Virus record (IMG/VR): IMGVR_UViG_3300044712_002668
Coordinates: 186,001-250,000 of that record
DNA length: 64,000 nt
Direction: 5' to 3' (one strand)
Shown here: piece after piece, positions 16,135-28,894 of the stretch
Layout: every line of letters starts with the position of its first letter
Numbering within the stretch: position 1 is the first letter of the stretch
Translations under genes and position numbers: made by a program
The notes under the pieces: model-generated
Seen by the model: the letters and a program-made list of their open reading frames with translations, nothing else
Told to the model about the DNA's origin: nothing
Databases searched by the model: none

Positions 16135-16143
16135 ATATAAACG

Positions 16144-16215: not shown

Positions 16216-16219
16216 AAAA

Positions 16220-16369
16220 AAGCAACGAAAATGGTGAGACCCTACATGCCTTTCGGCTCCGTCGTGTCTGCCAATTTCACCATACCTCTCTTGCGAGAGA
16301 TAGCGGGACTCGAACCCGCACATCTTTTGGATAACAGTTTTGCAGATGAAAGATCTCAGTCGCGTTGTT
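16220..16369 (-). ncRNA. scaffold RNA copy 1 carrying a circularly permuted class-II tRNA(GCA)
   Basis: P1-GCG-P2-UUUCA|UC scaffold; cargo 16259-16346 is 3' half, GCAA loop, then 5' half. Confidence 0.8.
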
Positions 16370-16372
16370 TAG

Positions 16373-16443
16373 TTGGGGAACTAGGATTCGAACCTAGATA
16401 ACAAGCACCAAAAACTCGTGTCCTGCCATTGGACGATTCCCCA
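16373..16443 (-). tRNA. tRNA-Gln(TTG)
   Basis: TGGGGAA/TTCCCCA, CGAGT-TTTTGGT-GCTTG. Confidence 0.88.
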
Positions 16444-16463
16444 ATATTCAATTATCAAATAAC

Positions 16464-16537
16464 GGAGCCGAAAGTGAGATTTGAACTCACGACCACCAGT
16501 TTACAAAACTGATGCTCTACCGCTGAGCTATTTCGGC
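16464..16537 (-). tRNA. tRNA-Thr(TGT)
   Basis: GCCGAAA/TTTCGGC, TCAGT-TTTGTAA-ACTGG. Confidence 0.92.
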
Positions 16538-16548
16538 AAGGAATCTGT

Positions 16549-16578
16549 ATATTACAATACAGATCCAAAACTTGTCAA
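16549..16578 (-). promoter_or_regulatory. sigma70-like promoter of the 15.2-16.5 kb tRNA block
   Basis: TTGACA-N18-TAATAT with an overlapping palindrome ATCTGTAT...ATACAGAT. Confidence 0.55.
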
Positions 16579-16774
16579 GTATATATCAAATTATTGATAT
16601 TTTTGACCTTTAATCTTCTTTTTGAGAAATCTTTTTACTTTAGCAGCCGCTTGATTCACTGCTTCATTTATAGCAACATTAATTGCTATCTTAACTGCTG
16701 TTTTTACAATTGTTCCTATCATGTCAATCTCCTATGGACCCGCATCCTAGCACTAACCCCAGGGATTGCAAGCC

Positions 16775-18055
16775 CTATTCGTCATCCCAGATGCTATCCG
16801 TCTTGTCCTCTGCCATCGCCCCCATCGACTCCAATTTTACCTCTATCTCAAAAAATGTTGATAACCACTTCTTAAAACTAAGAAATGTTGATGTAACATT
16901 TTCTGTTTTATGTGGTCCTAGTAAAAATTCAGTTATTTCTGGTGTTCCAAAAACTTTCCATAATCCATTATCTGATAAAAATTTCTTTGGAACAACATAA
17001 TCTGAATATGTAAAATTACAAGATAATTTATCTATATGAGTAAACCCTAAAGAAAAATCAGGATCTATTTTACTATTATCTTTAATTATGTTAGAAGCTC
17101 TAAGGGCGTAAAACATAAGCTGTAGATCAAAGTAACCAGTTCTAAGTTTACCCTGCCAAGTACCAGTTACATTATGATCGTCAGAATAAATATGATCTAG
17201 TTTATCTGACTCTGTAGGAAAAGGCCCAGGTCCATGTCTTGTGGGATAAACCCTCAACAAGCCTAATTTCTTAATAGGATCATCATAGTTAGCTTCTTCT
17301 AACAAGGAATAAACGTTATTGAATGTGGTATCAGTCCAAGTATTATATGGAGTGAAACCTACATTCTCATCAAGAAGAACTCCTTGAGCACCTTCAAATA
17401 GAATATTTTCTTGCTGATGTTCAAATACATGTCTTAGATATGCCGAATCAGTTATGTGTAATCCTGACTCAATAAACTGCTGACATCTTTCAATAAAATA
17501 ATCTATCTCTTCTTCAGTACAGCAAATGTCAAAATTGTTTTTTACAATTTCATTTTGAATTCTTACTTTATTGAGTAGAATATTTTTAGTTTGTAAATCT
17601 TTTACTCTTAAAGAGAGATCTGGATAATCTATATTATACTTTACAGTTTCACCGATACCCATACCACAAGAACCATGGCGTTGATTACCACGATCTTGTT
17701 CTCTTTTTTTATTCAGTAGAATATGTACTGGAGTTGTTACTAAAGCTTCCCTATCTACAGATAAACGAAATAGAGGATTGTAAGGTAGGTCTGTTGCTTC
17801 ATTGAGAAGCGCCCCAGGATTTACAATCATATATTTTGACAAGTGTGTAAATACACTAGGCAAAAATGAACCAGCACCAAATTGTGCAAAGGTATGGTGT
17901 TGATCTTTAGTAACTACATTATGAGCGGCTTGTGCGCCGCCATTATATCTTATAACATGTTTTATGTCATATTTTCTGCACAAATAATCTGTAACAGAGC
18001 CTTTGCCCTCATCACCGAAACCAAGCCCGGCAACAGCAATTACTTTTCTGTTCAT
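16775..18055 (-). CDS. purA: adenylosuccinate synthetase
   Basis: GLGFGDEGKG P-loop, RYNGGAQAAH, EGAQG, TRHGPGPFP. Confidence 0.9.
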   Translation of the reverse strand: MNRKVIAVAGLGFGDEGKGSVTDYLCRKYDIKHVIRYNGGAQAAHNVVTKDQHHTFAQFGAGSFLPSVFTHLSKYMIVNPGALLNEATDLPYNPLFRLSVDREALVTTPVHILLNKKREQDRGNQRHGSCGMGIGETVKYNIDYPDLSLRVKDLQTKNILLNKVRIQNEIVKNNFDICCTEEEIDYFIERCQQFIESGLHITDSAYLRHVFEHQQENILFEGAQGVLLDENVGFTPYNTWTDTTFNNVYSLLEEANYDDPIKKLGLLRVYPTRHGPGPFPTESDKLDHIYSDDHNVTGTWQGKLRTGYFDLQLMFYALRASNIIKDNSKIDPDFSLGFTHIDKLSCNFTYSDYVVPKKFLSDNGLWKVFGTPEITEFLLGPHKTENVTSTFLSFKKWLSTFFEIEVKLESMGAMAEDKTDSIWDDE

Positions 18056-18058
18056 TAG

Positions 18059-18130
18059 AGACTCAGGTAGGGATTGAACCTACGACCAGCGACTTAACAG
18101 GCCACCGCTCTACCACTGAGCTACTGAGTC
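18059..18130 (-). tRNA. tRNA-Asn(GTT)
   Basis: GACTCAG/CTGAGTC, GTGGC-CTGTTAA-GTCGC. Confidence 0.9.
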
Positions 18131-18136
18131 AATGAG

Positions 18137-18206
18137 TCGGCTTGTCAGGATTTCCACCTGAATCGCCCTGTACAATCAGGGGCTTTGAGAATTAAGCTAC
18201 AAGCCG
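18137..18206 (-). pseudogene. tRNA-Pro-like gene with aberrant 6-nt anticodon loop
   Basis: CGGCTTG/CAAGCCG-A73 (Pro identity); anticodon arm CCCTG-ATTGTA-CAGGG. Confidence 0.6.
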
Positions 18207-18237
18207 TTTTTATTCAGGTGTTACTAAAGATACCTTT

Positions 18238-19179
18238 TCATGTACCAGTAGAAACACCAGAAGCTTTTGATTTGGCCAGAGCATCAAGAGCGCCAGTTAC
18301 AACACTAATGGCATCCTTTGATACACCGGACTCTTCCAAATCTTTTGCCATATCTCCAGCAGTTCCCTCAATCAAAGCGATTGATAAACCAATGGATTCG
18401 CAAACAAGACTTGGATCTTGTAGCATGATAACGTTCTCACCACCAAGAAGATCTACCCATGTCTTTTTTAGAACAGGATCTGAGTAGTGGCTTGTACCAG
18501 AAGGGATGACAAAGAAGATGTGATACTTCTTTTGAGCCTCAGCAATGACATCCTTGATTGGCAAATCTTGCGGAACATCATCACCAAATAGACGGGCAAT
18601 CTCTGCTTTTGTACATTTCGGATATGGCTTTTCATCGCCAATCAAAAACAGATAACCTTTTTTATTTCGCTTTTCAAGGCAATCAATGGAAGTGTGATGA
18701 GCCATGAAGTAAATGGCGTTTTGATAGCTCTCTTCATACGAGCCACCTCCACCACCTTCAAGCCACATATTTGTAAGATCATTATCCATCTCAATTCCAG
18801 ATTCAAACTGTCCAATCTGGATTGACCCATGATCTGAATAATAATCCCCTACAGCACCAAATAGTACCTGAGGATCTTTAATGTATCCTCTTTGTAAAAG
18901 AAGTTCCATAAGCTTGGGAAGCTTCTTTTGCATTTGATGAGGAACCCTATGCATGGATCCTGTTACATCAAAAATTACAGCAATTGCGGTAGATTCAGGA
19001 TGAGCTTCAGAATCACGGCTTTCGCGATTCTTTCCAAATGGATTCAAAGACTCATGTACTTTGGCTGCTGTTTGACCGGATCTGATTTTATCAGAATATT
19101 CAAACGCATCCACACCACGGCGAGAACGGTCTGCTGTTCTACTGACGTAGTGATCATCACTCCAACTGGAACTTCCCAT
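18238..19179 (-). CDS. von Willebrand factor A domain protein
   Basis: MIDAS-like FDVTGSM; GGGGSYEESY; LFLIGDE. Confidence 0.85.
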   Translation of the reverse strand: MGSSSWSDDHYVSRTADRSRRGVDAFEYSDKIRSGQTAAKVHESLNPFGKNRESRDSEAHPESTAIAVIFDVTGSMHRVPHQMQKKLPKLMELLLQRGYIKDPQVLFGAVGDYYSDHGSIQIGQFESGIEMDNDLTNMWLEGGGGGSYEESYQNAIYFMAHHTSIDCLEKRNKKGYLFLIGDEKPYPKCTKAEIARLFGDDVPQDLPIKDVIAEAQKKYHIFFVIPSGTSHYSDPVLKKTWVDLLGGENVIMLQDPSLVCESIGLSIALIEGTAGDMAKDLEESGVSKDAISVVTGALDALAKSKASGVSTGT

Positions 19180-19196
19180 TGTATCAGCCTTCTTTC

Positions 19197-19643
19197 TTAT
19201 GTAACTTTGAAATTAGATTTTTCTCTACCCATTTCAAAGAATCTTGGAACCATATACCAATCATTAGGATCAAACCCGGCTTTATCATCAATCAAGATTG
19301 AGAAGTACGGTTTTAGATCAAAACAACCAGTTTTTGTGTTTTGAATGGGTGTTTTGTTTACTGCTTTAAACTCAACACCAAGTTCCTTTAGCTTATCAAG
19401 ATATTTTGAATAATCTTGTTCATAACAAGATGTCCAAAGAACCAGATAAACCTCAGGCAGTTTTGACAGCTTTTTCAATGCATCTATAGCATGGGGAAAA
19501 AACTTTACTACATCACTTGTGTAGTTTGAATCTGCTATCGTATCATGAACATCTACTAAAACATAAATAGTGTTCCATTCTCTTTGGACCGCTGTTTTAT
19601 ATGCTTTGGTAATGGATTGTAGTAGACTCATTTTACTTGGCAC
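19197..19643 (-). CDS. HAD-like phosphatase
   Basis: VDVHDTI, LWTS, and KPYFSILIDDKAGF; true start is probably the internal MSLLQ. Confidence 0.65.
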   Translation of the reverse strand: MPSKMSLLQSITKAYKTAVQREWNTIYVLVDVHDTIADSNYTSDVVKFFPHAIDALKKLSKLPEVYLVLWTSCYEQDYSKYLDKLKELGVEFKAVNKTPIQNTKTGCFDLKPYFSILIDDKAGFDPNDWYMVPRFFEMGREKSNFKVT

Positions 19644-19713
19644 CCCCGGTAGGATTCGAACCTACGATGGGAAGATTAGAAATCTTCTGCCTTATCCACT
19701 AGGCAACGGAGGC
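19638..19713 (-). tRNA. tRNA-Arg(TCT)
   Basis: GAAGA-TTTCTAA-TCTTC, encoded CCA. Confidence 0.9.
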
Positions 19714-20046
19714 GTAATGTCTCAGTCTGTGACAGTTAGAGCATAAAAGCACACATTTGTCAAGCTCTTCCTTAATCTGTTTCGCAGATTTTAATCTTAA
19801 TTTAGTCCATTCAACATCTTTATCAGTTAGATGATGAAAATCATATACAGAATAGTGATATTCATTATTACAATCAAAACATTTTCCACCCATCATTTGT
19901 ATAGCTTGTATTTTTCTATTAATCCACCTTTGTATACAATACTTGTTAAAACAATCTTTGCATTTAGATGCTGGTACACCAGGTTTTCTTTCGTAAAAAT
20001 CGGATATTTTTTTGTCAGTTTTACATGTAGGACATTTCTTGATCAT
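19699..20046 (-). CDS. HNH homing endonuclease
   Basis: CPTC/CKDC, CFDC...YDFHH...CVLLCSNCHRLRH; last five codons lie inside tRNA-Arg(TCT). Confidence 0.85.
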   Translation of the reverse strand: MIKKCPTCKTDKKISDFYERKPGVPASKCKDCFNKYCIQRWINRKIQAIQMMGGKCFDCNNEYHYSVYDFHHLTDKDVEWTKLRLKSAKQIKEELDKCVLLCSNCHRLRHYASVA

Positions 20047-20067
20047 ATCCTATTGCAAGGATATGCA

Positions 20068-20104
20068 TAGAAAGATAATTTCTATCCGGCTGAGCTATGG
20101 AGGC
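20068..20104 (-). pseudogene. 5' half remnant of tRNA-Arg(TCT)
   Basis: GCCTCCA-TA-GCTC-AGCCGGATA-GAAA-TTATC-TT-TCT-A, ending just after the anticodon. Confidence 0.7.
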
Positions 20105-20110
20105 ATAGTT

Positions 20111-20500
20111 TTAAATTATCAGACTACCTTTGGGTTCTTTTGGCATTTCTTTTTCTACAGAAAGACCAGAACGTTCGGCACGATTTTTAAGCATGATGTC
20201 ATGAAATTCTGCAAGCATGCGTTCATAACGCATCCCCTTATCATTCATGTCTTTAAAATACCTTATATTATCAATGACAGCAAAAATAGTTACGGGACCA
20301 TCTTCGGCATCCACAGGGACAATATGAGTTTTATAACTCAACCCCAGTCCATTCGGAGTTGGAATCATAATCATATCAGAACGGATTTCAAAACAATTTT
20401 CAAGTTTTACCGGGTTGGTAATTGGTAGCGAAATATTAAGATCCTCACCGATCTCACAAATCAATTTACGACAACCAGAACATACAATTGCTTTTTCCAT
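20111..20500 (-). CDS. hypothetical protein
   Basis: 129-aa ORF with CSGC. Confidence 0.55.
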   Translation of the reverse strand: MEKAIVCSGCRKLICEIGEDLNISLPITNPVKLENCFEIRSDMIMIPTPNGLGLSYKTHIVPVDAEDGPVTIFAVIDNIRYFKDMNDKGMRYERMLAEFHDIMLKNRAERSGLSVEKEMPKEPKGSLII

Positions 20501-20502
20501 TA

Positions 20503-21321
20503 TTATTCCTTGAATTCTTTTGGCAAGATATCTACAAAACGTTTTAGATCAAAGTTCTTTGGATCTGAAACCTGACCATCACCTATTTCAATGATACGGA
20601 ATTTTCCGTCAGTTCTTCTCGCTATATCAACAGAGAAAAAACCGTTTGCAAAACCAATTTTATGTACACATTCTGTAAGTATCTCTGGTATGGTATACGG
20701 ATTTGTAGCATGTTTGGGAGAGAATTTCTCCGTATTTGAATATGCTATACCTTTTACTACAAAGAATCTTTGTTCAGAGTTTGTAAGATAATCTTCACCA
20801 TGTCTTACACATACCCCACCCTCAATGCATCCTCGATATTTTTTGATTGCTAAAACAACTTCTTGAATATCATCTTTGGATTTTACCAAAGAACCCGGTG
20901 ACATTGAGTTGGATTTTACAAAATCTTTTATAAAGTAACTAGGCCACTTTAAATTGGCCAAAGCTTCTTTGAAGTTTGCGTTTTCATCTAGTATGATGGT
21001 TTCAGCAGTAAGATGTGCAATCTTCGGATACCAGAATGGTAGGTGATGACAGAATCTATATGACTCTGTAGTAGTAAAAAGCTTGGCTCCGTATTTCTTT
21101 ATTTCATATTCAAGAATTTGATACTCATCGATATTGAGCATCCAGCCACGATATAGCACAGTATCGCCAGCTTTGATCGCTGGCTTGATAGAGATCTGTT
21201 GTCCGATAGTTATAACAGAGGCTTCGTAGCCGTTAGACTGTATAGTATCGAACTCTTCTCGCCAAACACAATCTGGCAAAAAGTCTTTTACTGGATCTGC
21301 TGGATAGAGTATTCGTAACAT
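20503..21321 (-). CDS. ATP-grasp domain protein (R2K-like)
   Basis: FIKDFVKS, EQRFFVV, FFSVDIA, IIEIGDGQVSD. Confidence 0.8.
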   Translation of the reverse strand: MLRILYPADPVKDFLPDCVWREEFDTIQSNGYEASVITIGQQISIKPAIKAGDTVLYRGWMLNIDEYQILEYEIKKYGAKLFTTTESYRFCHHLPFWYPKIAHLTAETIILDENANFKEALANLKWPSYFIKDFVKSNSMSPGSLVKSKDDIQEVVLAIKKYRGCIEGGVCVRHGEDYLTNSEQRFFVVKGIAYSNTEKFSPKHATNPYTIPEILTECVHKIGFANGFFSVDIARRTDGKFRIIEIGDGQVSDPKNFDLKRFVDILPKEFKE

Positions 21322-21328
21322 AAATCAG

Positions 21329-21415
21329 CGGAGAATGAGGGAGTCGAACCCCCGGTAGAGTTTCCCCTACGTCGGTTTTCAAAACCGATGCCATAAACCA
21401 CTCGGCCAATTCTCC
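21329..21415 (-). tRNA. tRNA-Ser(TGA)
   Basis: TCGGT-TTTGAAA-ACCGA, long variable arm, G73. Confidence 0.92.
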
Positions 21416-21428
21416 ATATACAATATAG

Positions 21429-21502
21429 TGGGCTCACTCGGGTTCGAACCGAGAACATCCCGGTTATGAGCCGGGGGCTCTGACCGATTGAGCTATGAGC
21501 CC
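21429..21502 (-). tRNA. tRNA-Ile2/Met(CAT)
   Basis: GGGCTCA/TGAGCCC, CCCGG-CTCATAA-CCGGG; body looks Ile2-like. Confidence 0.85.
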
Positions 21503-21512
21503 AGATGCAGTC

Positions 21513-22535: not shown

Positions 22536-22583
22536 AGCCTGTTATATATCTATCAATTTGAACGAATTTATATAAGGTGAATT

Positions 22584-22967: not shown

Positions 22968-23944
22968 TGGTATTAGATAATTTTCCACCTGACAATTGTG
23001 CAGAACGTGAGCAGATGATTCTTGATTCCGTTATAAACGGAACAGCTACTTTCGGCTTCACTACAATTACCTCTGAATATAATGGGCACCAAGCTACGTT
23101 TTATGTTTTTGAAGATGCTTTGAAACTTGAAGGAGTAAGACTTAATGTAAGTGCTAGAAATATGCAAAAAATAGCTGACTTGCTATATTGTATATTACCA
23201 ACCCCAAGATTATATGATTTGATGTGGTATCAATGTCCAGCAAAAATTGAACCACAACCTAGATCAATTACATCTTCAACAGCCGCTATGATTGATTATA
23301 GTAAAGTGGTTGATGCAGAGTTAGCAAAAGCCAACTGCCCGGATGGTGTTGTTAAATCTACCATAGGAAAAATCTGGGTTGTTGATAATTCAATGCAAGG
23401 CTCACAGATGGCTTGCAACTATGGATGGCATTTTATAAAAGGTAATAATTATAAAGGTATATCTGGAGATGTAAATCAAAGCTTTTTAAAAAATCCATCT
23501 ACTGGTCAATATTATTATATGATACAAAGCACCGGACATGCCCACGATGCTAGCCATATTGATTATAGCCAAATATGCATTTTGGTATCAAGACATTGTG
23601 TTGTGGATGGTAAGGATATGGATATCCTTGATGTGTTGACGGATTCTTTATTATCACCCCTTGCTAATAACGGCGGTATATTAAAGGTGTTGAGACAGCC
23701 TGGAATAGAGGAATTACAACCACTACCCACAGCCCCTTATCTTCCAAAACCACCACAAACATTTCCAGAAACTGAGAGTCCTACATTACCATCAGAACAA
23801 ACTCCAGTAGAAATTCCAATTGAAGTTGGAACACCTGAGAATGGGACGGAGGTTATTGCTAAGCAACCTGTTGTTGCCTCTTTAGGCTTTGTGGCTATAA
23901 TAATATCAATTATAAAATTTATATTATCATTCTTCAGAAAGTGA
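22967..23944 (+). CDS. hypothetical protein with C-terminal TM anchor
   Basis: 325 aa; NYGWH and HDASHIDYSQ motifs, Pro-rich linker, hydrophobic tail. Confidence 0.6.
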   Translation: MVLDNFPPDNCAEREQMILDSVINGTATFGFTTITSEYNGHQATFYVFEDALKLEGVRLNVSARNMQKIADLLYCILPTPRLYDLMWYQCPAKIEPQPRSITSSTAAMIDYSKVVDAELAKANCPDGVVKSTIGKIWVVDNSMQGSQMACNYGWHFIKGNNYKGISGDVNQSFLKNPSTGQYYYMIQSTGHAHDASHIDYSQICILVSRHCVVDGKDMDILDVLTDSLLSPLANNGGILKVLRQPGIEELQPLPTAPYLPKPPQTFPETESPTLPSEQTPVEIPIEVGTPENGTEVIAKQPVVASLGFVAIIISIIKFILSFFRK

Positions 23945-24799
23945 AACATTCTCATGCCATAGTCTGTAAATTTCATTATCAATTTCTTCCATATCCAGGT
24001 TTGGCATCTCAGCATTTCCGGTTTGTATAGCTTGTCCAGATTCATTCAAGAATGGATAGGTTGCCAAGAAATAATCAATTACTCTTTGATCTGTGGTTAC
24101 AGGAAGGGCGGAAGTTGATTTTATAAACACAGCTTGTGGTTCATTATTACCAGCGGCAATTGTTTTGATATGATTTTCTAAACCTTTGGCATGGTTTGTA
24201 ATTCTTATTTTGAAGTTATCTCCAAAGCCACCATAGTATCCAGTAAAGTACATAGCTCTTGAAAAAGCAAAGATATCACCTTGTTCTGCGGCTTGCATAC
24301 ATAGTTCAGCACGTCCGGGGCCTGGAATTCCTGGCTTATTCCAATCAGGAAGCTGGCGTTCTTTAGTCAAGAACCTTTGTTGTGGGTTTTGTTTGAAACA
24401 GATTCTTATTACATCTGCTGCTCCATCAACATCATTGGAGTATACTTTAAATTTGGTAACGTATGTTTGTGTTTTGACGTTACCTGTACCTGGCAATGAA
24501 TCTTGATTTTTGAATCCAGGTAAATGTTGTTTTGATGATGCTAATTGAACGGCACCCCAGTTATGAGCTGCATTACCTTCAGTAGATTTCCACCCTCTAC
24601 CATAGGAGCTTTCCAATCTGCACACAGCTTGTACTAGTTGCGCTTGTTGTACGGTTGGTTCGGTGCCAAAAACTTGCTTCCAAGCTTCGGTTATAATTTT
24701 TCTGGCCCATACTTCATTGGCACCTGATAATGCATTTTTTATAAAGCTGTAATAACTGGATGCATATTTTTCAATTCTAGCTACAGAACGCATATTCAT
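23927..24799 (-). CDS. lysozyme-fold glucosaminidase (GH73-like)
   Basis: LESSYG, HNWGAVQ, FKVYSNDVDGAAD, GYY; start moved to MNMRS because the longer ORF overlaps tRNA-Val. Confidence 0.55.
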   Translation of the reverse strand: MNMRSVARIEKYASSYYSFIKNALSGANEVWARKIITEAWKQVFGTEPTVQQAQLVQAVCRLESSYGRGWKSTEGNAAHNWGAVQLASSKQHLPGFKNQDSLPGTGNVKTQTYVTKFKVYSNDVDGAADVIRICFKQNPQQRFLTKERQLPDWNKPGIPGPGRAELCMQAAEQGDIFAFSRAMYFTGYYGGFGDNFKIRITNHAKGLENHIKTIAAGNNEPQAVFIKSTSALPVTTDQRVIDYFLATYPFLNESGQAIQTGNAEMPNLDMEEIDNEIYRLWHENVSLSEE

Positions 24800-24820
24800 A
24801 TGAGTATATATGCAGTTAAG

Positions 24821-24892
24821 TCTCCCCTGAAGGATTCGAACCTTCGGATTTCCGCAAGTCAAACGGACGATATACCACTTATCTAAGAGGAG
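24821..24892 (-). tRNA. tRNA-Val(GAC)
   Basis: TCCGT-TTGACTT-GCGGA, T arm GAAGG-TTCGAAT-CCTTC. Confidence 0.8.
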
Positions 24893-24921
24893 ATATAGGA
24901 ATAAATAGTTATAGTATTAGT

Positions 24922-25314
24922 TTGGAGAAAAGTATGAGTAATCTTAAAAAAATAGCAATGTTGGCCGCCAGAAAAGCTGCAGTAGAAACATATAAATCTA
25001 TTATGAAAATGGCCGATCAACCATGGGAAGCTCCAATCTTAAAAGATGATCTGGGTAAAGAGATGGGTATTGATGATGCTGCTGTTTGTAAATTTTTGAC
25101 TGATAATGGGGCTCCAAATGTTGCTGAAACATACAGGGGTGCAAATATAAATCTACAAACTAACGAACCTGTACGTAAAGACGTTGCTACTTTGAGTGGT
25201 GAATGGGCCAATGTAAATAAAAAAGTAAAAATTGGAATCAAGACTCAAACAATTATAAGCAATAGTGTTTACAGACAAACAAAACCACCTGTAAGACTTG
25301 CTATTTATAGATAG
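24922..25314 (+). CDS. hypothetical protein sharing its N-terminus with 54538..54951
   Basis: NLKKIA..AA.KAA.ETY.SIMKMA. Confidence 0.65.
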   Translation: MEKSMSNLKKIAMLAARKAAVETYKSIMKMADQPWEAPILKDDLGKEMGIDDAAVCKFLTDNGAPNVAETYRGANINLQTNEPVRKDVATLSGEWANVNKKVKIGIKTQTIISNSVYRQTKPPVRLAIYR

Positions 25315-25315
25315 G

Positions 25316-25387
25316 GTGGCATACGGGTTACGCTCCCGTCAATGAGATGTTCACAGCATCCCGGCTTCGCTAGCTGCCTCATGCCAC
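25316..25387 (-). tRNA. tRNA-His(GTG)
   Basis: encoded G-1, GGATG-CTGTGAA-CATCT; T loop AGCGTAA. Confidence 0.85.
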
Positions 25388-25389
25388 AG

Positions 25390-25460
25390 TTCGGGTATCT
25401 GGACTCGAACCAGAATCAAGAGCTTCAGAGACTCTTATGTTGCCATTACATAATACCCGA
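25390..25460 (-). tRNA. tRNA-Gln(CTG)
   Basis: TCGGGTA/TACCCGA, AGAGT-CTCTGAA-GCTCT. Confidence 0.9.
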
Positions 25461-25471
25461 ATTTATTTTAA

Positions 25472-25765
25472 TTATCTATCTAAATCTTCTACTTCAATAC
25501 CTTTTTCTTTAAAAAAAGACATTATATCCATATCACACATAATCTCATCTCTATCAGCTAAAAAGCTGTAGACTTCATCATTCTCATACATACTCCAGTT
25601 GTGTACACTATAAGAATTTTGAGAATAGTTGTATCCACCATATTTATTACCAATTTCTTTGGTGAAGTTTTTTATAAAATTTATTTGATCTTGTGTGAGA
25701 TTGGTTTTCTGTATGATAAAGGAACAGCTTGAAGAATTTGAAACAAAACCAGTACGAACTTTCAT
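25472..25765 (-). CDS. phage protein of the MK.R.GFVSNSSS family
   Basis: N-terminus MKVRTGFVSNSSSCSFII; GGAG RBS. Confidence 0.7.
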   Translation of the reverse strand: MKVRTGFVSNSSSCSFIIQKTNLTQDQINFIKNFTKEIGNKYGGYNYSQNSYSVHNWSMYENDEVYSFLADRDEIMCDMDIMSFFKEKGIEVEDLDR

Positions 25766-25783
25766 AACTTATACTCCTGTGAA

Positions 25784-25860
25784 TGGTTGAGAAGGTGGGA
25801 CTCGAACCCACAAAAATAACAGCTTCAAAGACTGTTGCCTTGCCATTAGACTACTTCTCA
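25784..25860 (-). tRNA. tRNA-Gln(TTG)
   Basis: ACAGT-CTTTGAA-GCTGT, encoded CCA. Confidence 0.9.
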
Positions 25861-25861
25861 G

Positions 25862-25934
25862 TGACCCTAACCGGATTTGAACCGGTATGTTCTGGCTGAG
25901 AACCAAAAATCCTTAACCGTTAGATGATAGGGCC
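25862..25934 (-). tRNA. tRNA-Glu(CTC)
   Basis: GGCCCTA/TAGGGTC, TTTGG-TTCTCAG-CCAGA. Confidence 0.88.
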
Positions 25935-25977
25935 AAAATCGTGATGACAATTGCCAGCGCTGGTAAATATCATCACT

Positions 25978-26033
25978 AAATCTTGTTGAGGAATCGAACC
26001 CCCTTGTGCGCACTGCCAGTCCAGGCCAAGATT
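25978..26033 (-). ncRNA. 56-nt tRNA-like RNA lacking an anticodon arm
   Basis: AATCTTG/CAAGATT acceptor, T arm GGGG-TTCGATT-CCTC, middle only TGCGCA. Confidence 0.55.
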
Positions 26034-26036
26034 CTG

Positions 26037-26124
26037 TGCCTCTGGAGGGATTCGAACCCTCAAGCTCTTATATTGAGCGGCAGTTTTTGAAACTGCTGTG
26101 TATACCAAATTCCACCACATAGGC
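26037..26124 (-). tRNA. tRNA-Leu(CAA)
   Basis: GCAGT-TTCAAAA-ACTGC, long variable arm. Confidence 0.88.
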
Positions 26125-26130
26125 AAAAAC

Positions 26131-26308
26131 GGGGCTGCTCTACCGTTGAGCTACTCAACCTGTATTCAAACATTTCTTCGAACGGCACCTTCGCAAAGTG
26201 ATATCCCTTTGCACTCCAGGCTTTAGCTTACGCTTAACGTTGAGAGGAAATTGCCTTCCCAGGACTGTCATACATGTTGATACTGGATTCGAACCAGTGA
26301 CCAACCCC
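26131..26308 (-). ncRNA. circularly permuted tRNA-like gene without scaffold
   Basis: 3' half 26275-26308 precedes 5' half 26131-26160; GTTGA/TCAAC and GCCCC/GGGGT pair across the halves. Confidence 0.65.
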
Positions 26309-26312
26309 TCAG

Positions 26313-26386
26313 TACCGCAAAGTGGACTCGAACCACCATCCTTTTTCTTATGAGGAAAACGCTCAAACCAATTGAGCTATTGCGGT
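26313..26386 (-). tRNA. tRNA-Met(CAT)
   Basis: ACCGCAA/TTGCGGT, TTTTC-CTCATAA-GAAAA. Confidence 0.88.
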
Positions 26387-26391
26387 ATATA

Positions 26392-26496
26392 ATAGCGAAA
26401 ATGGTGTGACAAATGGGAACCGTCCCGTATTTAGGCCCGGAGTCGAACCGATGCCCTCCAATTTTGGCGGAGATGAAATGTCACGAACGCGCTACT
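26392..26496 (-). ncRNA. scaffold RNA copy 2 (degenerate T-arm cargo)
   Basis: UAGC-GCG...GACA-UUUCAUC...UGUC...UUUC-GCUA. Confidence 0.75.
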
Positions 26497-26498
26497 AG

Positions 26499-26581
26499 TG
26501 CCATTGACAGGATTCGAACCTGCATGAGAAAACTCGTCACGTTCTTAGCGTGATATGTATACCAAATTCCATCACAATGGC
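26499..26581 (-). tRNA. tRNA-Leu(AAG)
   Basis: TCACG-CTAAGAA-CGTGA, Leu-type D arm and variable arm. Confidence 0.85.
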
Positions 26582-26586
26582 ATGAA

Positions 26587-26760
26587 GATAACGAAAAGAT
26601 TGTCAGACGGGGTTTTTGCACTAGCCTCCCCGATGATTGTAAATTGAGACTTATTTACTACTAGCAAAACTAGCATCTCAATTTTGGTCGGGGCCGGGAA
26701 TCGCACCACGGTTTCTGTATTTTTCTGATATAGATGAACCATCCAACTATGCGCGTTATC
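26587..26760 (-). ncRNA. scaffold RNA copy 3 carrying a permuted tRNA-Pro-like cargo
   Basis: GAUAAC-GCG...GAUGG-UUCAUC; T arm + CCCCGACCA, hairpin linker, then UCGGGG. Confidence 0.75.
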
Positions 26761-26762
26761 TG

Positions 26763-26845
26763 TGCCGTCAACAGGACTCGAACCTGCATGAGAAATCTCG
26801 ATAGTTTTTAAAACTATTGTGTATACCAAATTCCACCATAACGGC
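26763..26845 (-). tRNA. tRNA-Leu(TAA)
   Basis: ATAGT-TTTAAAA-ACTAT. Confidence 0.9.
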
Positions 26846-26852
26846 TAAAATT

Positions 26853-27060
26853 AAAACAACGAAAAGGGCTCAGACGAAGTTTTTCCAGCATCCGGCCACC
26901 GCAAAAAGCATATTTTAGTTTCGGTTATGTTTCCGAACTCATCTCATCTCTGTCATTCCTGAATAGAAATCGGGGATGAGTACCGCGCGGCGTAAGGGAG
27001 TCGAACCCTCATCGTTTGATTCGTAGTTCAAGATGAATCGTCCAAAAATCGCGTTGTTTT
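26853..27060 (-). ncRNA. scaffold RNA copy 4 carrying a permuted tRNA-Arg(ACG)-like cargo
   Basis: AACAAC-GCG...GACGA-UUCAUC; CU-ACG-AA loop, T arm, ACGCCGC, linker, GCGGUG. Confidence 0.75.
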
Positions 27061-27063
27061 TAG

Positions 27064-27139
27064 ATGCGGGTCTTGGATTTGAACCAAGGGAACTAGGCTT
27101 ATGAGACCCAGGAGTTAGGCCGGACTACTCTAACCCGCA
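27064..27139 (-). tRNA. tRNA-Met(CAT), initiator-like
   Basis: TGCGGGT/ACCCGCA, TGGGT-CTCATAA-GCCTA, fMet-like D arm GAGT/ACTC. Confidence 0.82.
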
Positions 27140-27146
27140 ATAATGT

Positions 27147-27268
27147 AAGTAACGTAAAGATCGAGACCCTACATGCCCACATGGGCGATTCCCCAGGTAA
27201 AGAACCTCGAAAGGTTCGGCGGGGAATTAAGTTTCGAGCTTAGATGAAAGATCCCTAACGCGTTACTT
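27147..27268 (-). ncRNA. scaffold RNA copy 5 (structured non-tRNA cargo)
   Basis: AAGUAAC-GCG...GAUC-UUUCAUC...GGUC...UUAC-GUUACUU. Confidence 0.75.
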
Positions 27269-27305
27269 GGTATAACATATAACATTATATTATATGTTAT
27301 TTAGA

Positions 27306-27427
27306 AACAACGAAATTATATTGACAATGGGCCGGTATTTTTAGCACCGTTCTCCTTTGACCCAGACCGGAATTGAACCGGTTCTCGCCCTAATTTTTGA
27401 TGGATGTAATGTCAATAGCGCGTTGTT
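27306..27427 (-). ncRNA. scaffold RNA copy 6 (T arm plus acceptor-strand cargo)
   Basis: AACAAC-GCG...GACA-UUACAUC...ACCGG-UUCAAUU-CCGGU...UGUC...UUUC-GUUGUU. Confidence 0.75.
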
Positions 27428-27429
27428 AG

Positions 27430-27502
27430 TCTCCCAGGAAGGATTTAAACCTCCGGCCTAAACGTTCGTAGCGTTCCGCTCTATTCGCTGAGCTACTGGG
27501 AG
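27430..27502 (-). tRNA. tRNA-Arg(ACG)
   Basis: CTCCCAG/CTGGGAG, GAACG-CTACGAA-CGTTT. Confidence 0.88.
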
Positions 27503-27867
27503 AATTTATATAAATCTCTATCATTGCCTTTTTTACAAAGTACAAACCCTAACTTTGTATGTGACTTTATCGATGCAATATTATCATGTTTTATAATTGC
27601 GTATAAATGATCCAACTTTTCTGTTTTTATCAGCTCATCATACATTATATTTGAATATCCTTTACCTCTATATTCTGGTTTTATTTCAATATGAGAGCAC
27701 TTTTTACCATCGTATTCAAACACACCAACTTCACCTATTTGTTTATCATTACTGTAAACTGAATATAAATGACCTGGCAGATTATATATAGTATTGCCAA
27801 CAAGTTTTAATTGGGTTTTAATTGACGCTTGTTTGTAATAAATGTTTATATAATCATCAAGATACAT
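27493..27867 (-). CDS. GNAT-family acetyltransferase
   Basis: IEIKPEYRGKGYS acetyl-CoA motif, NIASIKSHTKLGF. Confidence 0.85.
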   Translation of the reverse strand: MYLDDYINIYYKQASIKTQLKLVGNTIYNLPGHLYSVYSNDKQIGEVGVFEYDGKKCSHIEIKPEYRGKGYSNIMYDELIKTEKLDHLYAIIKHDNIASIKSHTKLGFVLCKKGNDRDLYKFSQ

Positions 27868-27900
27868 ATTGTAAAGTTACAAAAATATGCATATAACAGG

Positions 27901-27983
27901 CTCCTGAGGAAAGACTCGAACTTCCATAATCCTTACGGATGACACGTTAACAGCGTGCTGCATTACCATTATGCTACCCAGGA
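27901..27983 (-). tRNA. tRNA-Asn(GTT) with long variable arm
   Basis: TCCTGGG/CTCAGGA-G73, GCACG-CTGTTAA-CGTGT, extra arm ATCC-GTAA-GGAT. Confidence 0.8.
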
Positions 27984-27988
27984 ATAAA

Positions 27989-28130
27989 CTTGACGAAAAG
28001 CTTGAAGACCATTTTTTTTCGCGCTTTACTATTAAGCTATATGAGCAAGAGTTTGATTTGCGCTCATATCGGGACTTGCACCCGAAACTTCGTCATTAAC
28101 AGTGATGAACGATCTTCTAATCGCGTCAAG
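27989..28130 (-). ncRNA. scaffold RNA copy 7 carrying a circularly permuted tRNA-Asn(GUU)
   Basis: cargo 28020-28105; joining CG|UCA gives an unbroken cloverleaf. Confidence 0.85.
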
Positions 28131-28132
28131 AG

Positions 28133-28205
28133 CGATCTGGACGGGAGTTGAACCCGCACAATACACTTCGACAGAGTGTTGCACTACCAATTGTGCTACC
28201 AGACC
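28133..28205 (-). tRNA. tRNA-Asp(GTC)
   Basis: ACACT-CTGTCGA-AGTGT, G73. Confidence 0.9.
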
Positions 28206-28210
28206 AAACG

Positions 28211-28285
28211 TGGGTTATCCCGGTAACGATCCGGGGAATTCTTCTACTTAAGAGGTAGTTGCTGTTCCATTCTAGCTTATAACCC
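28211..28285 (-). tRNA. tRNA-Lys(CTT)
   Basis: GGGTTAT/ATAACCC, CTAC-CTCTTAA-GTAG; T loop ATCGTTA. Confidence 0.8.
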
Positions 28286-28289
28286 ATAA

Positions 28290-28369
28290 CTTAACGAAAA
28301 TGTAAAAGACCTTTTTGTTTTTTAATTTTTCATATTAATTTTAGATGAAAGATCCTTCAGCGCGTTAAG
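28290..28369 (-). ncRNA. scaffold RNA copy 8 (minimal AU-rich cargo)
   Basis: CUUAAC-GCG...GAUC-UUUCAUC-(about 30 nt AU-rich)-GGUC...UUUC-GUUAAG. Confidence 0.75.
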
Positions 28370-28371
28370 AG

Positions 28372-28446
28372 TGGGCCCAGCCGGTAACGATCCGGCGAAT
28401 TCTTCTGCTTAAAAGGCAGCTGCTGTTCCATTCTAGCTTTAGGCCC
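28372..28446 (-). tRNA. tRNA-Lys(TTT)
   Basis: GGGCCTA/TGGGCCC, CTGC-CTTTTAA-GCAG; T loop ATCGTTA. Confidence 0.8.
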
Positions 28447-28452
28447 AATATG

Positions 28453-28568
28453 ATATGACGAAAAATTAATGACCTGTTTTTTCAGCGGGACTTGAACCCA
28501 CAAATGTTTCCGTATAGGGGAAATGCTTTAACCAATTTAGCGATGAAAGGTCATTCAGCGCGTCATAT
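28453..28568 (-). ncRNA. scaffold RNA copy 9 carrying an acceptor-less tRNA body (UAU)
   Basis: D arm, UUUCC-CCUAUAC-GGAAA and T arm lie directly between UUUCAUC and GGUC. Confidence 0.75.
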
Positions 28569-28644
28569 TGGTCCCGTCCCCTGGTTTCGCGCCAGGCTCC
28601 CTTGCTCTTCAGGCAAATGCTTTCACTAGATTAGCTTAGACGGG
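28569..28644 (-). tRNA. tRNA-Phe(GAA)
   Basis: TTTGC-CTGAAGA-GCAAG, encoded CCA; T loop CGCGAAA. Confidence 0.82.
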
Positions 28645-28652
28645 ATAATAGT

Positions 28653-28808
28653 AGATAACGAAAAATTGAAAAACCCTTTTTTACGCGCTCTGACCAACTG
28701 AGCTATCTGCCTATTTTGGGTTCAATTAAGAACCTTGTAGGCAGAATTGGATTCGAACCAATGACATCGTCCTTATAATGGATGAAAGATTTTTCTACCG
28801 CGTTATCT
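28653..28808 (-). ncRNA. scaffold RNA copy 10 carrying a circularly permuted tRNA-Ile(UAU)
   Basis: cargo 28684-28782; joining CG|UCC restores CGUCC/GGACG. Confidence 0.82.
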
Positions 28809-28809
28809 G

Positions 28810-28894
28810 TGGGGCTGATAGGATTCGAACCTACTAGGCCAATCGGCCGACAGTTTTACAGACTGTTGCAACTCTCCCGCTTTGCCGCAACCCC
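28810..28894 (-). tRNA. tRNA-Tyr(GTA)
   Basis: ACAGT-CTGTAAA-ACTGT, long variable arm. Confidence 0.9.

What the first reader, a model, noticed from the sequence alone, without database searches (positions are those of the whole stretch)
16216..28810. Scaffold copies alternate with intact tRNAs (tRNA punctuation)
Seen: eight of the ten copies sit within about 0-10 nt of a canonical tRNA on both sides (Gln/1/Glu, Leu/2/Met, Leu/3/Leu, fMet/4/Leu, Asp/7/Asn, Lys/8/Lys, Phe/9/Lys, Tyr/10/Phe). Copies 5 and 6 abut a tRNA on one side. Established: RNase P and 3' trimming release tRNAs from polycistrons. Inference: normal tRNA maturation would free each scaffold as a discrete RNA with P1 closing its ends, so the placement looks selected.
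Basis: partly seen in the sequence, partly recalled or inferred. Interest (0 to 1): 0.62.

Follow-up and report, generated by a model that had tools for sequence, protein, structure and literature searches.

The report
Phage Y RNA family inside tRNA operons
A huge uncultured phage carries at least 14 versions of a small structured RNA, most wedged exactly between tRNA genes, and they look like the Y RNA partners of a divergent Ro60 protein encoded next door, the largest such set I know of in one genome.

Summary
Ten copies of a structured RNA lie on the minus strand at 16220-28808. Eight fill the whole spacer between two tRNA genes, with 0-3 nt on the 5' side and 3-8 nt on the 3' side. Two abut a tRNA on one side only. 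Random placement gives a mean of 0.012 such cases.

The scaffold has a closing helix P1, an internal loop, a helix P2 and invariant AACGCG, UUCAUC and UUUUCGUU. In 39 copies from four phages, 98% of pair cells are paired and 12 of 14 pairs show double changes. The inner part varies. Many copies carry a T-arm, and some carry T-arm, hairpin and D-arm in the YrlA order.

Rfam's only non-tRNA match is YrlA, below threshold. About 1 kb upstream of three further copies, just outside the window, the phage encodes a divergent Ro60/Rsr, supported by PDB sequence and fold matches. Ro60 followed by scaffold copies recurs in five relatives.

Best reading: a phage Ro60/Y RNA system with an expanded Y RNA set, released from tRNA polycistrons by RNase P and 3' processing. 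No RNA data exist, so expression, ends and Ro60 binding are inferred. Novelty: a new variant of a known kind.

The parts
16220..16370 (-). Scaffold copy 1 (151 nt), between tRNA-Gln(ttg) and tRNA-Glu(ttc). Core holds a hairpin, a T-arm, a hairpin and a class-II-type D-arm-like segment.
26390..26497 (-). Scaffold copy 2 (108 nt), between tRNA-Leu(aag) and tRNA-Met(cat). P1 ends in GCG/CGC instead of ACG/CGU.
26586..26761 (-). Scaffold copy 3 (176 nt), between tRNA-Leu(taa) and tRNA-Leu(aag). Long core; missed by model R1, found by the motif-plus-pairing scan.
26854..27059 (-). Scaffold copy 4 (206 nt), between tRNA-Met(cat) and tRNA-Leu(taa). Core has a T-arm.
27147..27268 (-). Scaffold copy 5 (122 nt). 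tRNA-Met 7 nt downstream, copy 6 36 nt upstream. Its ortholog in phage G003 is 92% identical, with compensatory P1 changes.
27305..27428 (-). Scaffold copy 6 (124 nt). tRNA-Arg(acg) 0 nt upstream. UUCAUC is replaced by UUACAUCCAUC. T-arm in the core.
27988..28131 (-). Scaffold copy 7 (144 nt), between tRNA-Asp and tRNA-Asn. Core in YrlA order: anticodon-like hairpin, T-arm, hairpin, D-arm.
28289..28370 (-). Scaffold copy 8 (82 nt), a minimal form without a tRNA-like domain, between tRNA-Lys(ttt) and tRNA-Lys(ctt).
28453..28568 (-). Scaffold copy 9 (116 nt), between tRNA-Phe and tRNA-Lys(ttt). P2 encloses a complete cloverleaf, which ARAGORN calls tRNA-Ile(tat) at 28476-28550.
28653..28808 (-). 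Scaffold copy 10 (156 nt), between tRNA-Tyr and tRNA-Phe. T-arm, hairpin and D-arm core. Best Rfam YrlA match in the window (33 bits, full model length).
949..1058 (+). Divergent fourteenth copy. A 9-10 bp P1 with AACGCG and UUUCGUU, an internal loop, and P2 as the acceptor stem of a tRNA-like cloverleaf with a 3-4 nt 'anticodon' loop. No UUCAUC. Free-standing.
   Evidence: MFE z = -7.0
16372..16443 (-). tRNA-Gln(ttg), 1 nt upstream of copy 1
16143..16215 (-). tRNA-Glu(ttc), 4 nt downstream of copy 1
26312..26386 (-). tRNA-Met(cat), 3 nt downstream of copy 2
26498..26581 (-). tRNA-Leu(aag), between copies 3 and 2
26762..26845 (-). tRNA-Leu(taa), between copies 4 and 3
27063..27139 (-). tRNA-Met(cat), between copies 5 and 4.
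27429..27502 (-). tRNA-Arg(acg), 0 nt upstream of copy 6
27899..27983 (-). tRNA-Asn(gtt), 4 nt downstream of copy 7
28132..28205 (-). tRNA-Asp(gtc), 0 nt upstream of copy 7
28211..28285 (-). Non-canonical tRNA-Lys(ctt) with T-loop AUCGUUA, 3 nt downstream of copy 8
   Evidence: (D9)
28372..28446 (-). Non-canonical tRNA-Lys(ttt), between copies 9 and 8
28572..28644 (-). Non-canonical tRNA-Phe(gaa), between copies 10 and 9
28809..28894 (-). tRNA-Tyr(gta), 0 nt upstream of copy 10
29366..29394 (-). Promoter-like site (TTGACG-17-TATATT) upstream of tRNA-Trp, a candidate start of the 25.9-29.0 kb tRNA/scaffold polycistron. Consensus match only.

Best explanation
The scaffolds are a multi-copy family of Y RNA-like noncoding RNAs. 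They belong to a Ro60 (Rsr) ribonucleoprotein system of a huge phage of about 455 kb.

Each RNA has a conserved platform. P1 ends in ACG/CGU. An asymmetric internal loop has a 5' strand starting CG and a 3' strand ending UUUU. P2 ends in GAUC/GGUC and is followed by UUCAUC. The platform is the likely binding site of the phage's divergent Ro60.

Each RNA also has a variable cargo. In many copies the cargo mimics part or all of a tRNA, as in bacterial YrlA.

Most genes sit as units inside tRNA operons. Host RNase P cutting at the 5' end of the next tRNA, and 3' processing of the preceding CCA-less tRNA, would release each RNA with P1 at its ends and in step with the tRNAs. By analogy with the Ro60/Y RNA/PNPase machines of Deinococcus, Salmonella and Thermus phage phiLo, the cargo would tether or gate Ro60 with an exonuclease. 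Candidates are host PNPase or the DEDD exonuclease always encoded just upstream of this Ro60.

Shown: the structure, its conservation, the placement, the presence of Ro60 and its synteny with scaffold copies. Inferred: transcription, processing, Ro60 binding and effector tethering.
For: Structure:
- 14 copies in the genome against 0.25 expected in shuffles.
- P1 and P2 are paired in 98% of cells. 12 of 14 pairs show double changes. Slid controls give 34-54% paired.
- MFE folds of seven copies all close with P1 and contain P2.
- Individual copies have orthologs in other phages at 74-92% identity. Paralogs within a genome share only the platform.

Y RNA likeness:
- The only non-tRNA Rfam match is YrlA: 33 bits in the window and 45 and 42 bits in relatives, over the full model length, E down to 2.7e-7.
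- 24 of 43 copies have a T-arm, and 7 have a T-arm before a D-arm.
- The platform has the same layout as the stem of a Gordonia phage YrlA-like RNA: a helix ending in CG:CG, then a loop with a U-rich 3' strand UUUUCG (read directly).

Ro60:
- The 531-aa ORF at G000 181732-183327 matches D. radiodurans Rsr over its full length. A single sequence gives E 1.6e-8; a profile of three orthologs gives 5.3e-13, plus human and Xenopus Ro60.
- It passes Pfam vWA_Ro60.
- Its model's top 13 PDB fold matches are all Ro60/Rsr.
- JGI names its relatives 60 kDa SS-A/Ro.

Linkage:
- Scaffold copies lie 0.7-2.2 kb downstream of this Ro60 in G000, G002, G003, L304 and L305, whose Ro60 proteins are 56-71% identical to this one.

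Processing:
- Gaps to the flanking tRNAs are 0-3 and 3-8 nt, and the abutment is conserved in relatives.
- Most tRNA genes lack CCA, and the phage has a CCA-adding-family gene.
- No credible minus-strand terminator lies between 25.9 and 29.0 kb: the two minus-strand hits there fall inside tRNA genes.
- The plus-strand unit has a promoter-like site, then cA, cB, tRNA-Ile, tRNA-Pro and cC, then a terminator.

Precedent:
- Gordonia phage Mareelih has a YrlA-like match inside the tRNA array that follows its Ro gene.
- phiLo Ro60 binds two phage Y-like RNAs and host PNPase (PMC12135203).
Against: - No RNA-seq or binding data exist, and no run on record holds this phage as RNA.
- The published Rsr-contact motif GNCGAAN0-1G (PMC4201824) is absent. 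The 5' strand reads AACGCG instead.
- All YrlA scores are below Rfam's gathering score of 69.
- The ten copies in the finding lie 19-31 kb from the Ro60 gene and on the other strand, outside the 4 kb used to call YrlA genes.
- The Pfam TROVE model does not match the protein.
- About a third of copies carry no tRNA-like domain.
- tRNA flanking is not universal, so tRNA processing cannot be the only way their ends are made.
Confidence: 0.6

Rival explanations
1. The RNAs are tRNA-mimic decoys or sponges that act without Ro60. Released with the phage tRNAs, they would soak up host tRNA-targeting defence nucleases or tRNA-modifying and processing enzymes. The conserved platform would serve only as a stabilising clamp or bind some other protein.
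For: Many cores copy tRNA parts: a T-arm in 24 of 43 copies, full cloverleaves in copy 9 and the copy at 949-1058, and anticodon-like 7-nt loops in copies 7 and 10. They sit in a large phage tRNA array, and such arrays have been proposed to counter tRNA-directed defences (own knowledge). The canonical Ro-binding motif is missing (PMC4201824).
Against: The invariant part is the platform, not the tRNA-like part. A third of copies have no tRNA-like domain. The platform travels with the Ro60 gene in every relative examined, including minimal free-standing copies right after Ro60.
Confidence: 0.12
2. The scaffolds are processing or insulating spacers of the tRNA operons. Stable closed helices would keep neighbouring pre-tRNAs from misfolding or guide nucleases, and would be degraded after processing without any function of their own.
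For: They fill tRNA spacers exactly. P1 brings the two tRNA junctions together.
Against: Other tRNA pairs in the same array are joined by 0-20 nt without any scaffold. Free-standing copies exist with their own promoter-like and terminator-like signals. Invariant loop sequences and cargo-specific orthologs kept at 74-92% identity between phages whose proteins are about 45-70% identical argue for a function in trans.
Confidence: 0.1
3. The scaffold is a new self-cleaving ribozyme that cuts at its own 5' edge to free the upstream tRNA's 3' end. Theta (HDV-like) ribozymes do this downstream of tRNAs in gut phages (own knowledge).
For: P1 starts 0-3 nt after the tRNA discriminator. Invariant nucleotides sit in loops, as in ribozyme cores.
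Against: No match to any ribozyme family in Rfam at E up to 10. The fold is a simple nested stem without the pseudoknots of HDV-like ribozymes. Copies far from any tRNA keep the same invariant nucleotides. Linkage to Ro60 is unexplained by this reading.
Confidence: 0.05
4. The copies are decaying tRNA pseudogenes or a selfish repeat (MITE-like) that inserts between tRNA genes, with no RNA-level function.
For: Terminal inverted complementarity (P1) and many copies in one region superficially resemble a MITE. The cores resemble tRNA pieces.
Against: The P1 and P2 sequences differ between copies while pairing is kept: 99 cells have changes on both sides, and G-U pairs appear only on the tRNA-sense strand. 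Paralogs are old and have orthologs across phages. No target-site duplications or conserved terminal sequences were seen.
Confidence: 0.03

Closest known systems
YrlA / bacterial and phage Y RNAs bound by Ro60 (Rsr) (Rfam RF02553; Chen et al. 2014, PMC4201824; phiLo Yrl1 and Yrl2, PMC12135203)
   Same: A stem formed by the 5' and 3' ends, with an asymmetric internal loop, carries a variable module. In several copies that module is a T-arm, an acceptor-like hairpin and a D-arm in the YrlA order. The genes lie near a Ro60 gene on the same strand (cA, cB, cC and the copies in relatives). Rfam's YrlA model matches are weak but statistically significant (E down to 2.7e-7).
   Different: The 5' motif is AACGCG rather than GNCGAA, and there is an extra invariant UUCAUC. 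There are at least 14 paralogs per genome against one to a few elsewhere. Most are embedded in tRNA operons with ends set by the tRNA junctions. Many copies lack the tRNA-like domain or carry other cargo. The Ro60 partner is so divergent that Pfam TROVE misses it.
Stable RNAs of the phage T4 tRNA cluster (species 1 and 2, rnaC and rnaD); own knowledge, not tested here
   Same: Small stable RNAs of unknown function, co-transcribed with phage tRNAs and cut out by the tRNA-processing machinery.
   Different: T4 has two such RNAs and no Ro60. No sequence or structure relation was tested here.
tRNA punctuation of mitochondrial transcripts, and RNase P/Z release of MALAT1 mascRNA; own knowledge
   Same: Excision of tRNAs or tRNA-like elements defines the ends of the neighbouring RNAs in one long transcript.
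   Different: There the released products are mRNAs, rRNAs or a lncRNA 3' end. Here they would be a family of small structured RNAs in a phage.
Theta (HDV-like) ribozymes downstream of phage tRNAs; own knowledge
   Same: A structured RNA begins directly after a phage tRNA gene.
   Different: No pseudoknotted HDV fold and no Rfam ribozyme match. The scaffold also occurs away from tRNAs.

Membership tests
YrlA (Y RNA-like, RF02553) | Score at or above Rfam's gathering threshold (69 bits) | tested here: not met
   Best score is 33.1 bits in the window (copy 10) and 45.2 and 42.3 bits in relatives. Matches cover the full model length with E down to 2.7e-7.
YrlA (Y RNA-like, RF02553) | tRNA-like domain: T-arm, acceptor-like hairpin, D-arm, closed by a stem in place of the anticodon stem | tested here: inconclusive
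   Present in copies 7 and 10, partly in copy 1, and in 7 of 43 copies overall. 24 of 43 have a T-arm only. About a third have no tRNA-like part.
YrlA (Y RNA-like, RF02553) | 5' motif GNCGAAN0-1G thought to contact Rsr (PMC4201824) | tested here: not met
   The 5' strand is invariant AACGCG. The layout is otherwise the same as in a Gordonia phage YrlA-like RNA: a helix ending in CG:CG, then a loop with 3' strand UUUUCG.
YrlA (Y RNA-like, RF02553) | Encoded within about 4 kb of a Ro60 ortholog | tested here: met
   cA, cB and cC lie 1.0-1.6 kb downstream of the Ro60 ORF on the same strand. The same holds in G002, G003, L304 and L305. The ten copies of the finding itself lie 19-31 kb away.
YrlA (Y RNA-like, RF02553) | Bound by Ro60 in vivo or in vitro | not testable with these tools
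   Needs gel shift or immunoprecipitation.
Ro60 / Rsr protein (the proposed partner) | HEAT-repeat (TROVE) ring plus a C-terminal vWA domain with a MIDAS motif | tested here: met
   phmmer and a profile match Rsr 2NVO over residues 31-494 (E 1.6e-8 and 5.3e-13) and match RO60 9nen and 1yvp. Pfam vWA_Ro60 scores 33 bits against a cut-off of 27.7. DISGSM and GGTD motifs were read in the alignment. The top 13 Foldseek matches are all Ro60/Rsr, TM 0.56-0.64 to Rsr and phiLo Ro60, from a model of moderate confidence (pLDDT 63.6). The Pfam TROVE model itself gives no match.
tRNA (the flanking genes) | Cloverleaf recognised by ARAGORN or the Rfam tRNA model | tested here: met
   Ten of the 13 flanking tRNAs are found by ARAGORN. 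Lys(ttt) and Phe are found by Rfam only, at 38.7 and 37.1 bits. Lys(ctt) rests on its repeat with Lys(ttt) and a cloverleaf fold only.
Known self-cleaving ribozymes (hammerhead, twister, hatchet, pistol, HDV-like) | Match to the family's covariance model or fold | tested here: not met
   No such match at E up to 10 in 25900-28900. The structure is nested, without a pseudoknot.
MITE-like mobile repeat | Conserved terminal inverted repeat sequence and near-identical copies | tested here: not met
   The outer P1 positions differ between copies and covary. Paralogs share only the platform.

The most novel reading that the evidence does not exclude
The phage runs a combinatorial Ro60 machine. One Ro60, with the DEDD exonuclease always encoded next to it or with host PNPase, is programmed by a library of at least 14 interchangeable Y RNAs. 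These share one docking platform but carry different cargo domains, several of them tRNA mimics. They are made in fixed proportion to the phage tRNAs by RNase P and 3' processing. The cargo would direct the complex to different RNA classes, or capture tRNA-handling enzymes, during host takeover.
Probability: 0.25. Interest if true: 0.8.

Novelty: new variant of a known kind. Interest (0 to 1): 0.64.

Why it matters
Ro60/Y RNA particles occur from bacteria to humans, but what the variable part of a Y RNA does is still largely open. Known genomes have one to four Y RNAs. A phage clade with 14 or more, all sharing one platform and differing in cargo, is a natural experiment in Y RNA modularity. 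Each cargo can be tested for the partner it recruits.

The placement also shows a simple way for a phage to make defined small RNAs without their own promoters or terminators, by borrowing tRNA processing.

There are practical points for annotation. Such RNAs are invisible to Rfam thresholds, and tRNA finders partly miscall them: copy 9 is called tRNA-Ile, and the copy at 949-1058 is called a tRNA with a 2-nt anticodon. This Ro60 subfamily (about 90 metagenomic clusters) is also missed by the Pfam TROVE model.

Tried and rejected
- TROVE (PF05731) six-frame screens of G000, G001 and G002 found nothing. This proved a false negative for G000 and G002, because a divergent Ro60 was later found by reading an alignment and by PDB searches.
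- RtcB (PF01139): none found.
- Phage database: no nucleotide relative. Only tRNA-sized matches appeared.
- Pattern scans of IMG/VR were mostly chance matches. Filtering with model R1 left four phage records.
- The search for related loci with the single Ro60 protein in viral contigs found nothing. With the alignment in bacterial genomes it also found nothing.
- A scaffold pattern scan of bacterial genomes gave 51 chance-level matches. The one weak R1 match lies inside a coding region. No cellular member and no host clue emerged.
- R1 with filters off found fewer copies than with the default filters, and R1 misses the longest copies. The copy list therefore also rests on a motif-plus-pairing script.
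- Pfam and PHROGs scans of ORFs inside the array found no RNA-binding candidate. They found adenylosuccinate synthetase, an ATP-grasp protein, an HNH endonuclease, a GNAT acetyltransferase and a phosphoheptose-isomerase-like protein.
- G001 lacks Ro60. G001 is collinear only with G000 191-336 kb and starts just past the Ro60 locus, so its '100% complete' label is doubtful and the absence is uninformative.
- Complex prediction of Ro60 with the neighbouring exonuclease gave no verdict. It counts neither for nor against binding.
- Sequencing runs: only DNA metagenomes (rhizosphere, freshwater) hold the region.
- I looked for a partner strand for UUCAUC and found no consistent pairing across copies.

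Full report
WHAT IS THERE

The window is part of an uncultured virus record of 335,988 bp (G000; window = 186001-250000). A contig of 454,833 bp carrying the identical Ro60 protein is on record, so the phage genome is about 455 kb. The region from 6.7 to 29 kb holds about 36 tRNA genes, all on the minus strand.

Reading the minus strand shows ten spacers built on one plan. The 5' and 3' ends pair as helix P1, 7-9 bp, always ending in ACG/CGU (GCG/CGC in copy 2). An asymmetric internal loop follows: the 5' strand is CG plus 2-6 nt, and the 3' strand is 6-9 nt ending in UUU(U). Then comes helix P2, 6-8 bp, usually ending in GAUC/GGUC. Then comes an invariant UUCAUC, and finally a variable core.

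A motif-plus-pairing script finds 13 copies in the whole record, against 0.25 in shuffled genomes. Three more (cA, cB, cC) lie on the plus strand at G000 184342-184899, just left of the window. A covariance model built from six minimal copies also picks up a divergent fourteenth copy at window 949-1058 (+).

IS THE STRUCTURE REAL?

The model was run over four phage records and gave 39 aligned copies. In these, 98.0% of pair cells are standard pairs, against 76.5% in shuffles. Twelve of 14 pairs show changes on both sides, 99 such cells in all. Sliding the 3' partner by 1-3 columns drops pairing to 34-54%. That alignment is fitted to the model, so I also folded seven window copies on their own. 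Every minimum-free-energy structure closes with P1, has the internal loop and has P2, with z-scores from -2.0 to -7.0.

The invariant columns are AACGCG, the inner P2 pairs, UUCAUC, GGUC and UUUUCGUU. A U-G pair in P2 (26 of 39 copies) fixes the sense strand as that of the tRNAs.

THE PLACEMENT

Eight copies fill the whole spacer between two tRNA genes. Copies 5 and 6 share one spacer, 36 nt apart. The gap from the upstream tRNA to P1 is 0-3 nt, and the gap from P1 to the next tRNA is 3-8 nt (corrected by 109). Random placement of ten intervals of the same lengths gives a mean of 0.012 two-sided abutments.

Direct tRNA-tRNA junctions in the same array are 0-20 nt. The scaffolds therefore occupy slots as if they were tRNA genes.

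However, Lys-UUU, Lys-CUU and Phe are atypical tRNAs. ARAGORN's 'tRNA-Ile(tat)' at 28476-28550 is the cloverleaf core of copy 9 rather than a neighbour.

RELATIVES

Pattern scans of IMG/VR filtered with the model found the family in three other large phage contigs of 169, 208 and 219 kb. Their proteins are about 30-70% identical to those of this phage, with shared gene order.

Of the 43 copies listed, 26 have a tRNA within 0-3 nt upstream, 27 have one within 1-10 nt downstream, and 17 have both. This used ARAGORN alone, with some loci cut at their ends.

Single copies have orthologs across phages. Copy 5 is 92% identical to one in G003, and copies 1 and 10 are 77% identical to theirs. Paralogs within a genome share only the platform. 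The paralogs are therefore old, and each is kept.

WHAT IT IS

Rfam gives one non-tRNA match: YrlA, the bacterial Y RNA-like family. It scores 33 bits on copy 10 and 45 and 42 bits on copies in relatives, over the full model length, but below the gathering score of 69. The match rests mainly on the core. Several copies carry a T-arm, a hairpin and a D-arm in exactly the permuted order of YrlA. Other copies have only a T-arm (24 of 43), a whole cloverleaf (copy 9 and the copy at 949-1058), or no tRNA-like part at all (copy 8, cB, cC).

Y RNAs are defined by their partner, Ro60. Two six-frame screens with Pfam TROVE were negative. But a 531-aa ORF 1 kb upstream of cA, which I had picked only as a marker gene, showed a MIDAS-type vWA motif in its alignment. 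Four lines of evidence then identified it as Ro60:
- It matches D. radiodurans Rsr over nearly its whole length (E 1.6e-8).
- A profile of three phage orthologs matches Rsr at 5.3e-13, human RO60 at 9.2e-8 and Xenopus Ro at 0.0085.
- Pfam vWA_Ro60 passes its cut-off.
- The 13 best PDB fold matches of its model are all Ro60/Rsr, including phage phiLo Ro60, and the next match is about 4,000-fold weaker by E-value. The model is of moderate confidence.

About 90 metagenomic clusters at 45-70% identity form this subfamily. Several are named 60 kDa SS-A/Ro by JGI, and some lie on contigs of up to 459 kb.

THE LINK BETWEEN Ro60 AND THE SCAFFOLD

In G000 the order on the plus strand is: RNase T-family exonuclease, Ro60, one ORF on the opposite strand, a promoter-like site, cA, cB, tRNA-Ile, tRNA-Pro, cC, terminator.

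Scaffold copies also lie 0.7-2.2 kb downstream of Ro60 in G002 and G003, and in two more distant contigs. L305 (Ro60 56% identical) has three minimal copies. L304 (67%) has one. The exonuclease gene sits just upstream of Ro60 in every locus seen.

The only record without Ro60, G001, begins just past the place where the gene would lie, so its absence there says nothing.

The published Rsr-contact motif GNCGAAN0-1G (PMC4201824) is not present. However, a YrlA-like RNA of Gordonia phage Mareelih has the same layout: a helix ending in CG:CG, then a loop whose 3' strand reads UUUUCG. The platform here looks like a variant of that site, CGCG in place of CGAA, matched to a divergent Ro60. That last step is inference.

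HOW IT LIKELY WORKS

The dense block at 25.9-29.0 kb has a promoter-like site upstream of tRNA-Trp. Its only two minus-strand terminator-like hits fall inside tRNA genes, so I count none as credible. These are consensus scans only.

Most tRNA genes end in the discriminator plus one C and lack CCA. The phage carries a CCA-adding-family gene. Established tRNA maturation would then cut after each discriminator and at each tRNA 5' end. Each scaffold would be left with 1-4 nt before P1 and 3-8 nt after it, and P1 would shield the ends. The RNAs would be made in step with the tRNAs.

Ro60 would dock on the platform. By analogy with the Ro60/Y RNA/PNPase complexes of Deinococcus and Salmonella and of phage phiLo (PMC4201824, PMC12135203), the cargo would tether or gate an exonuclease.

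None of these steps is shown. No RNA run holds this phage.

Free-standing copies (cA/cB, 949-1058, L305) show that tRNA processing is a common route to defined ends but not the only one.

PRECEDENT AND NOVELTY

Ro60 genes with one or two Y-like RNAs are known in mycobacteriophages, CcrColossus, Bacillus phage G and phiLo (PMC4201824, PMC12135203). A review notes TROVE proteins in some jumbo phages (PMC7824862). In Gordonia phages the Ro gene is followed by a tRNA array. In Mareelih a YrlA-like match (52 bits) lies between two tRNAs of that array, under an annotated 'tRNA-Leu'.

Four things appear new here:
- the scale, at least 14 paralogs in one genome;
- the distinct platform sequence;
- the modular cargo;
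- the systematic exact fit between tRNA genes.

I found no paper describing this in three full-text searches.

RIVALS

I considered four other readings: Ro60-independent tRNA decoys, passive operon spacers, a new self-cleaving ribozyme, and a selfish repeat. All four explain the Ro60 linkage, the invariant loops and the conserved orthologs less well (see the rival entries).

LIMITS

- The host is unknown.
- Copy counts in the relatives are lower bounds.
- The complex prediction for Ro60 and the exonuclease gave no verdict.

Noticed in passing
G000 181732-183327 (+), i.e. 2.7-4.3 kb left of the window start; L118:5732-7327: A divergent Ro60/Rsr gene that the Pfam TROVE model and the six-frame genome screen both miss. 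About 90 related metagenomic clusters exist, many on contigs of 200-459 kb.
   Followed up: yes
G000 180655-181347 (+); L118:4655-5347: An RNase T-family (DEDD) 3'-5' exonuclease gene lies directly upstream of Ro60. The same pairing is seen in all five Ro60 loci examined, which makes it a candidate effector of the particle.
   Followed up: partly
window 26125-26311 (-): The spacer between tRNA-Met and tRNA-Leu(caa) holds another permuted tRNA-like RNA: a closing stem GGGGUUG/CAGCCCC, a T-arm, a long hairpin and a D-arm. It lacks the AACGCG/UUCAUC platform.
   Followed up: partly
window 25935-26035 (-): A 101-nt spacer between tRNA-Leu(caa) and tRNA-Glu(ctc) folds into two stable hairpin domains, one with a T-arm-like loop (MFE z = -2.9). 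It is not a member of the scaffold family.
   Followed up: partly
window 28211-28285 and 28372-28446 (-): Two Lys tRNAs (CUU and UUU) are 92% identical over 59 nt. Their T-loop reads AUCGUUA instead of UUCGAAU, which looks like a swapped 54-58 pair. ARAGORN does not call them.
   Followed up: partly
window 18136-18206 (-) and 967-1039 (+): ARAGORN reports two 'tRNAs' with 2-nt anticodons. The second is the core of the fourteenth scaffold copy. The first is a tRNA-like element next to tRNA-Asn, with no platform.
   Followed up: partly
whole tRNA array, window 6696-29020: Most tRNA genes end in the discriminator plus one C and then diverge; only five encode CCA. Many are preceded by (U)AUAU. The phage has a PolyA_pol/CCA-adding-family gene at G000 19993-20376.
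   Followed up: partly
window 27269-27304 (-): The 36-nt AT-rich spacer between copies 6 and 5 contains a 9-bp palindrome (AACAUAUAA / UUAUAUGUU) and a TATAAT-like box. It could be a processing site or an internal promoter.
   Followed up: no
window 27493-27867 (-), 19699-20046 (-), 16775-18055 (-), 20503-21321 (-): Protein genes are interspersed in the tRNA array: a GNAT acetyltransferase, an HNH endonuclease, adenylosuccinate synthetase and an ATP-grasp (R2K) protein. Several have homologs at the same places in the related phages.
   Followed up: partly
L303:6647-6746 (Gordonia phage Mareelih, OP820470.1): A YrlA-like match (52 bits) lies between tRNA-Gln and tRNA-Ile in the array that follows the phage's Ro gene. 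It overlaps an annotated 'tRNA-Leu(gag)', which is probably a miscall.
   Followed up: partly
G001 (IMGVR_UViG_3300035208_002255, 169 kb): This record is labelled as having inverted terminal repeats and being 100% complete. It is collinear only with G000 191-336 kb, so it is probably a fragment of a much larger genome.
   Followed up: partly
L304 and L305 (loci of related Ro60 genes): PARP-like (WGR/PARP), NAPRTase, ADP-ribosylglycohydrolase, IMPDH and ThyX genes cluster around the exonuclease-Ro60 pair in related huge phages.
   Followed up: no
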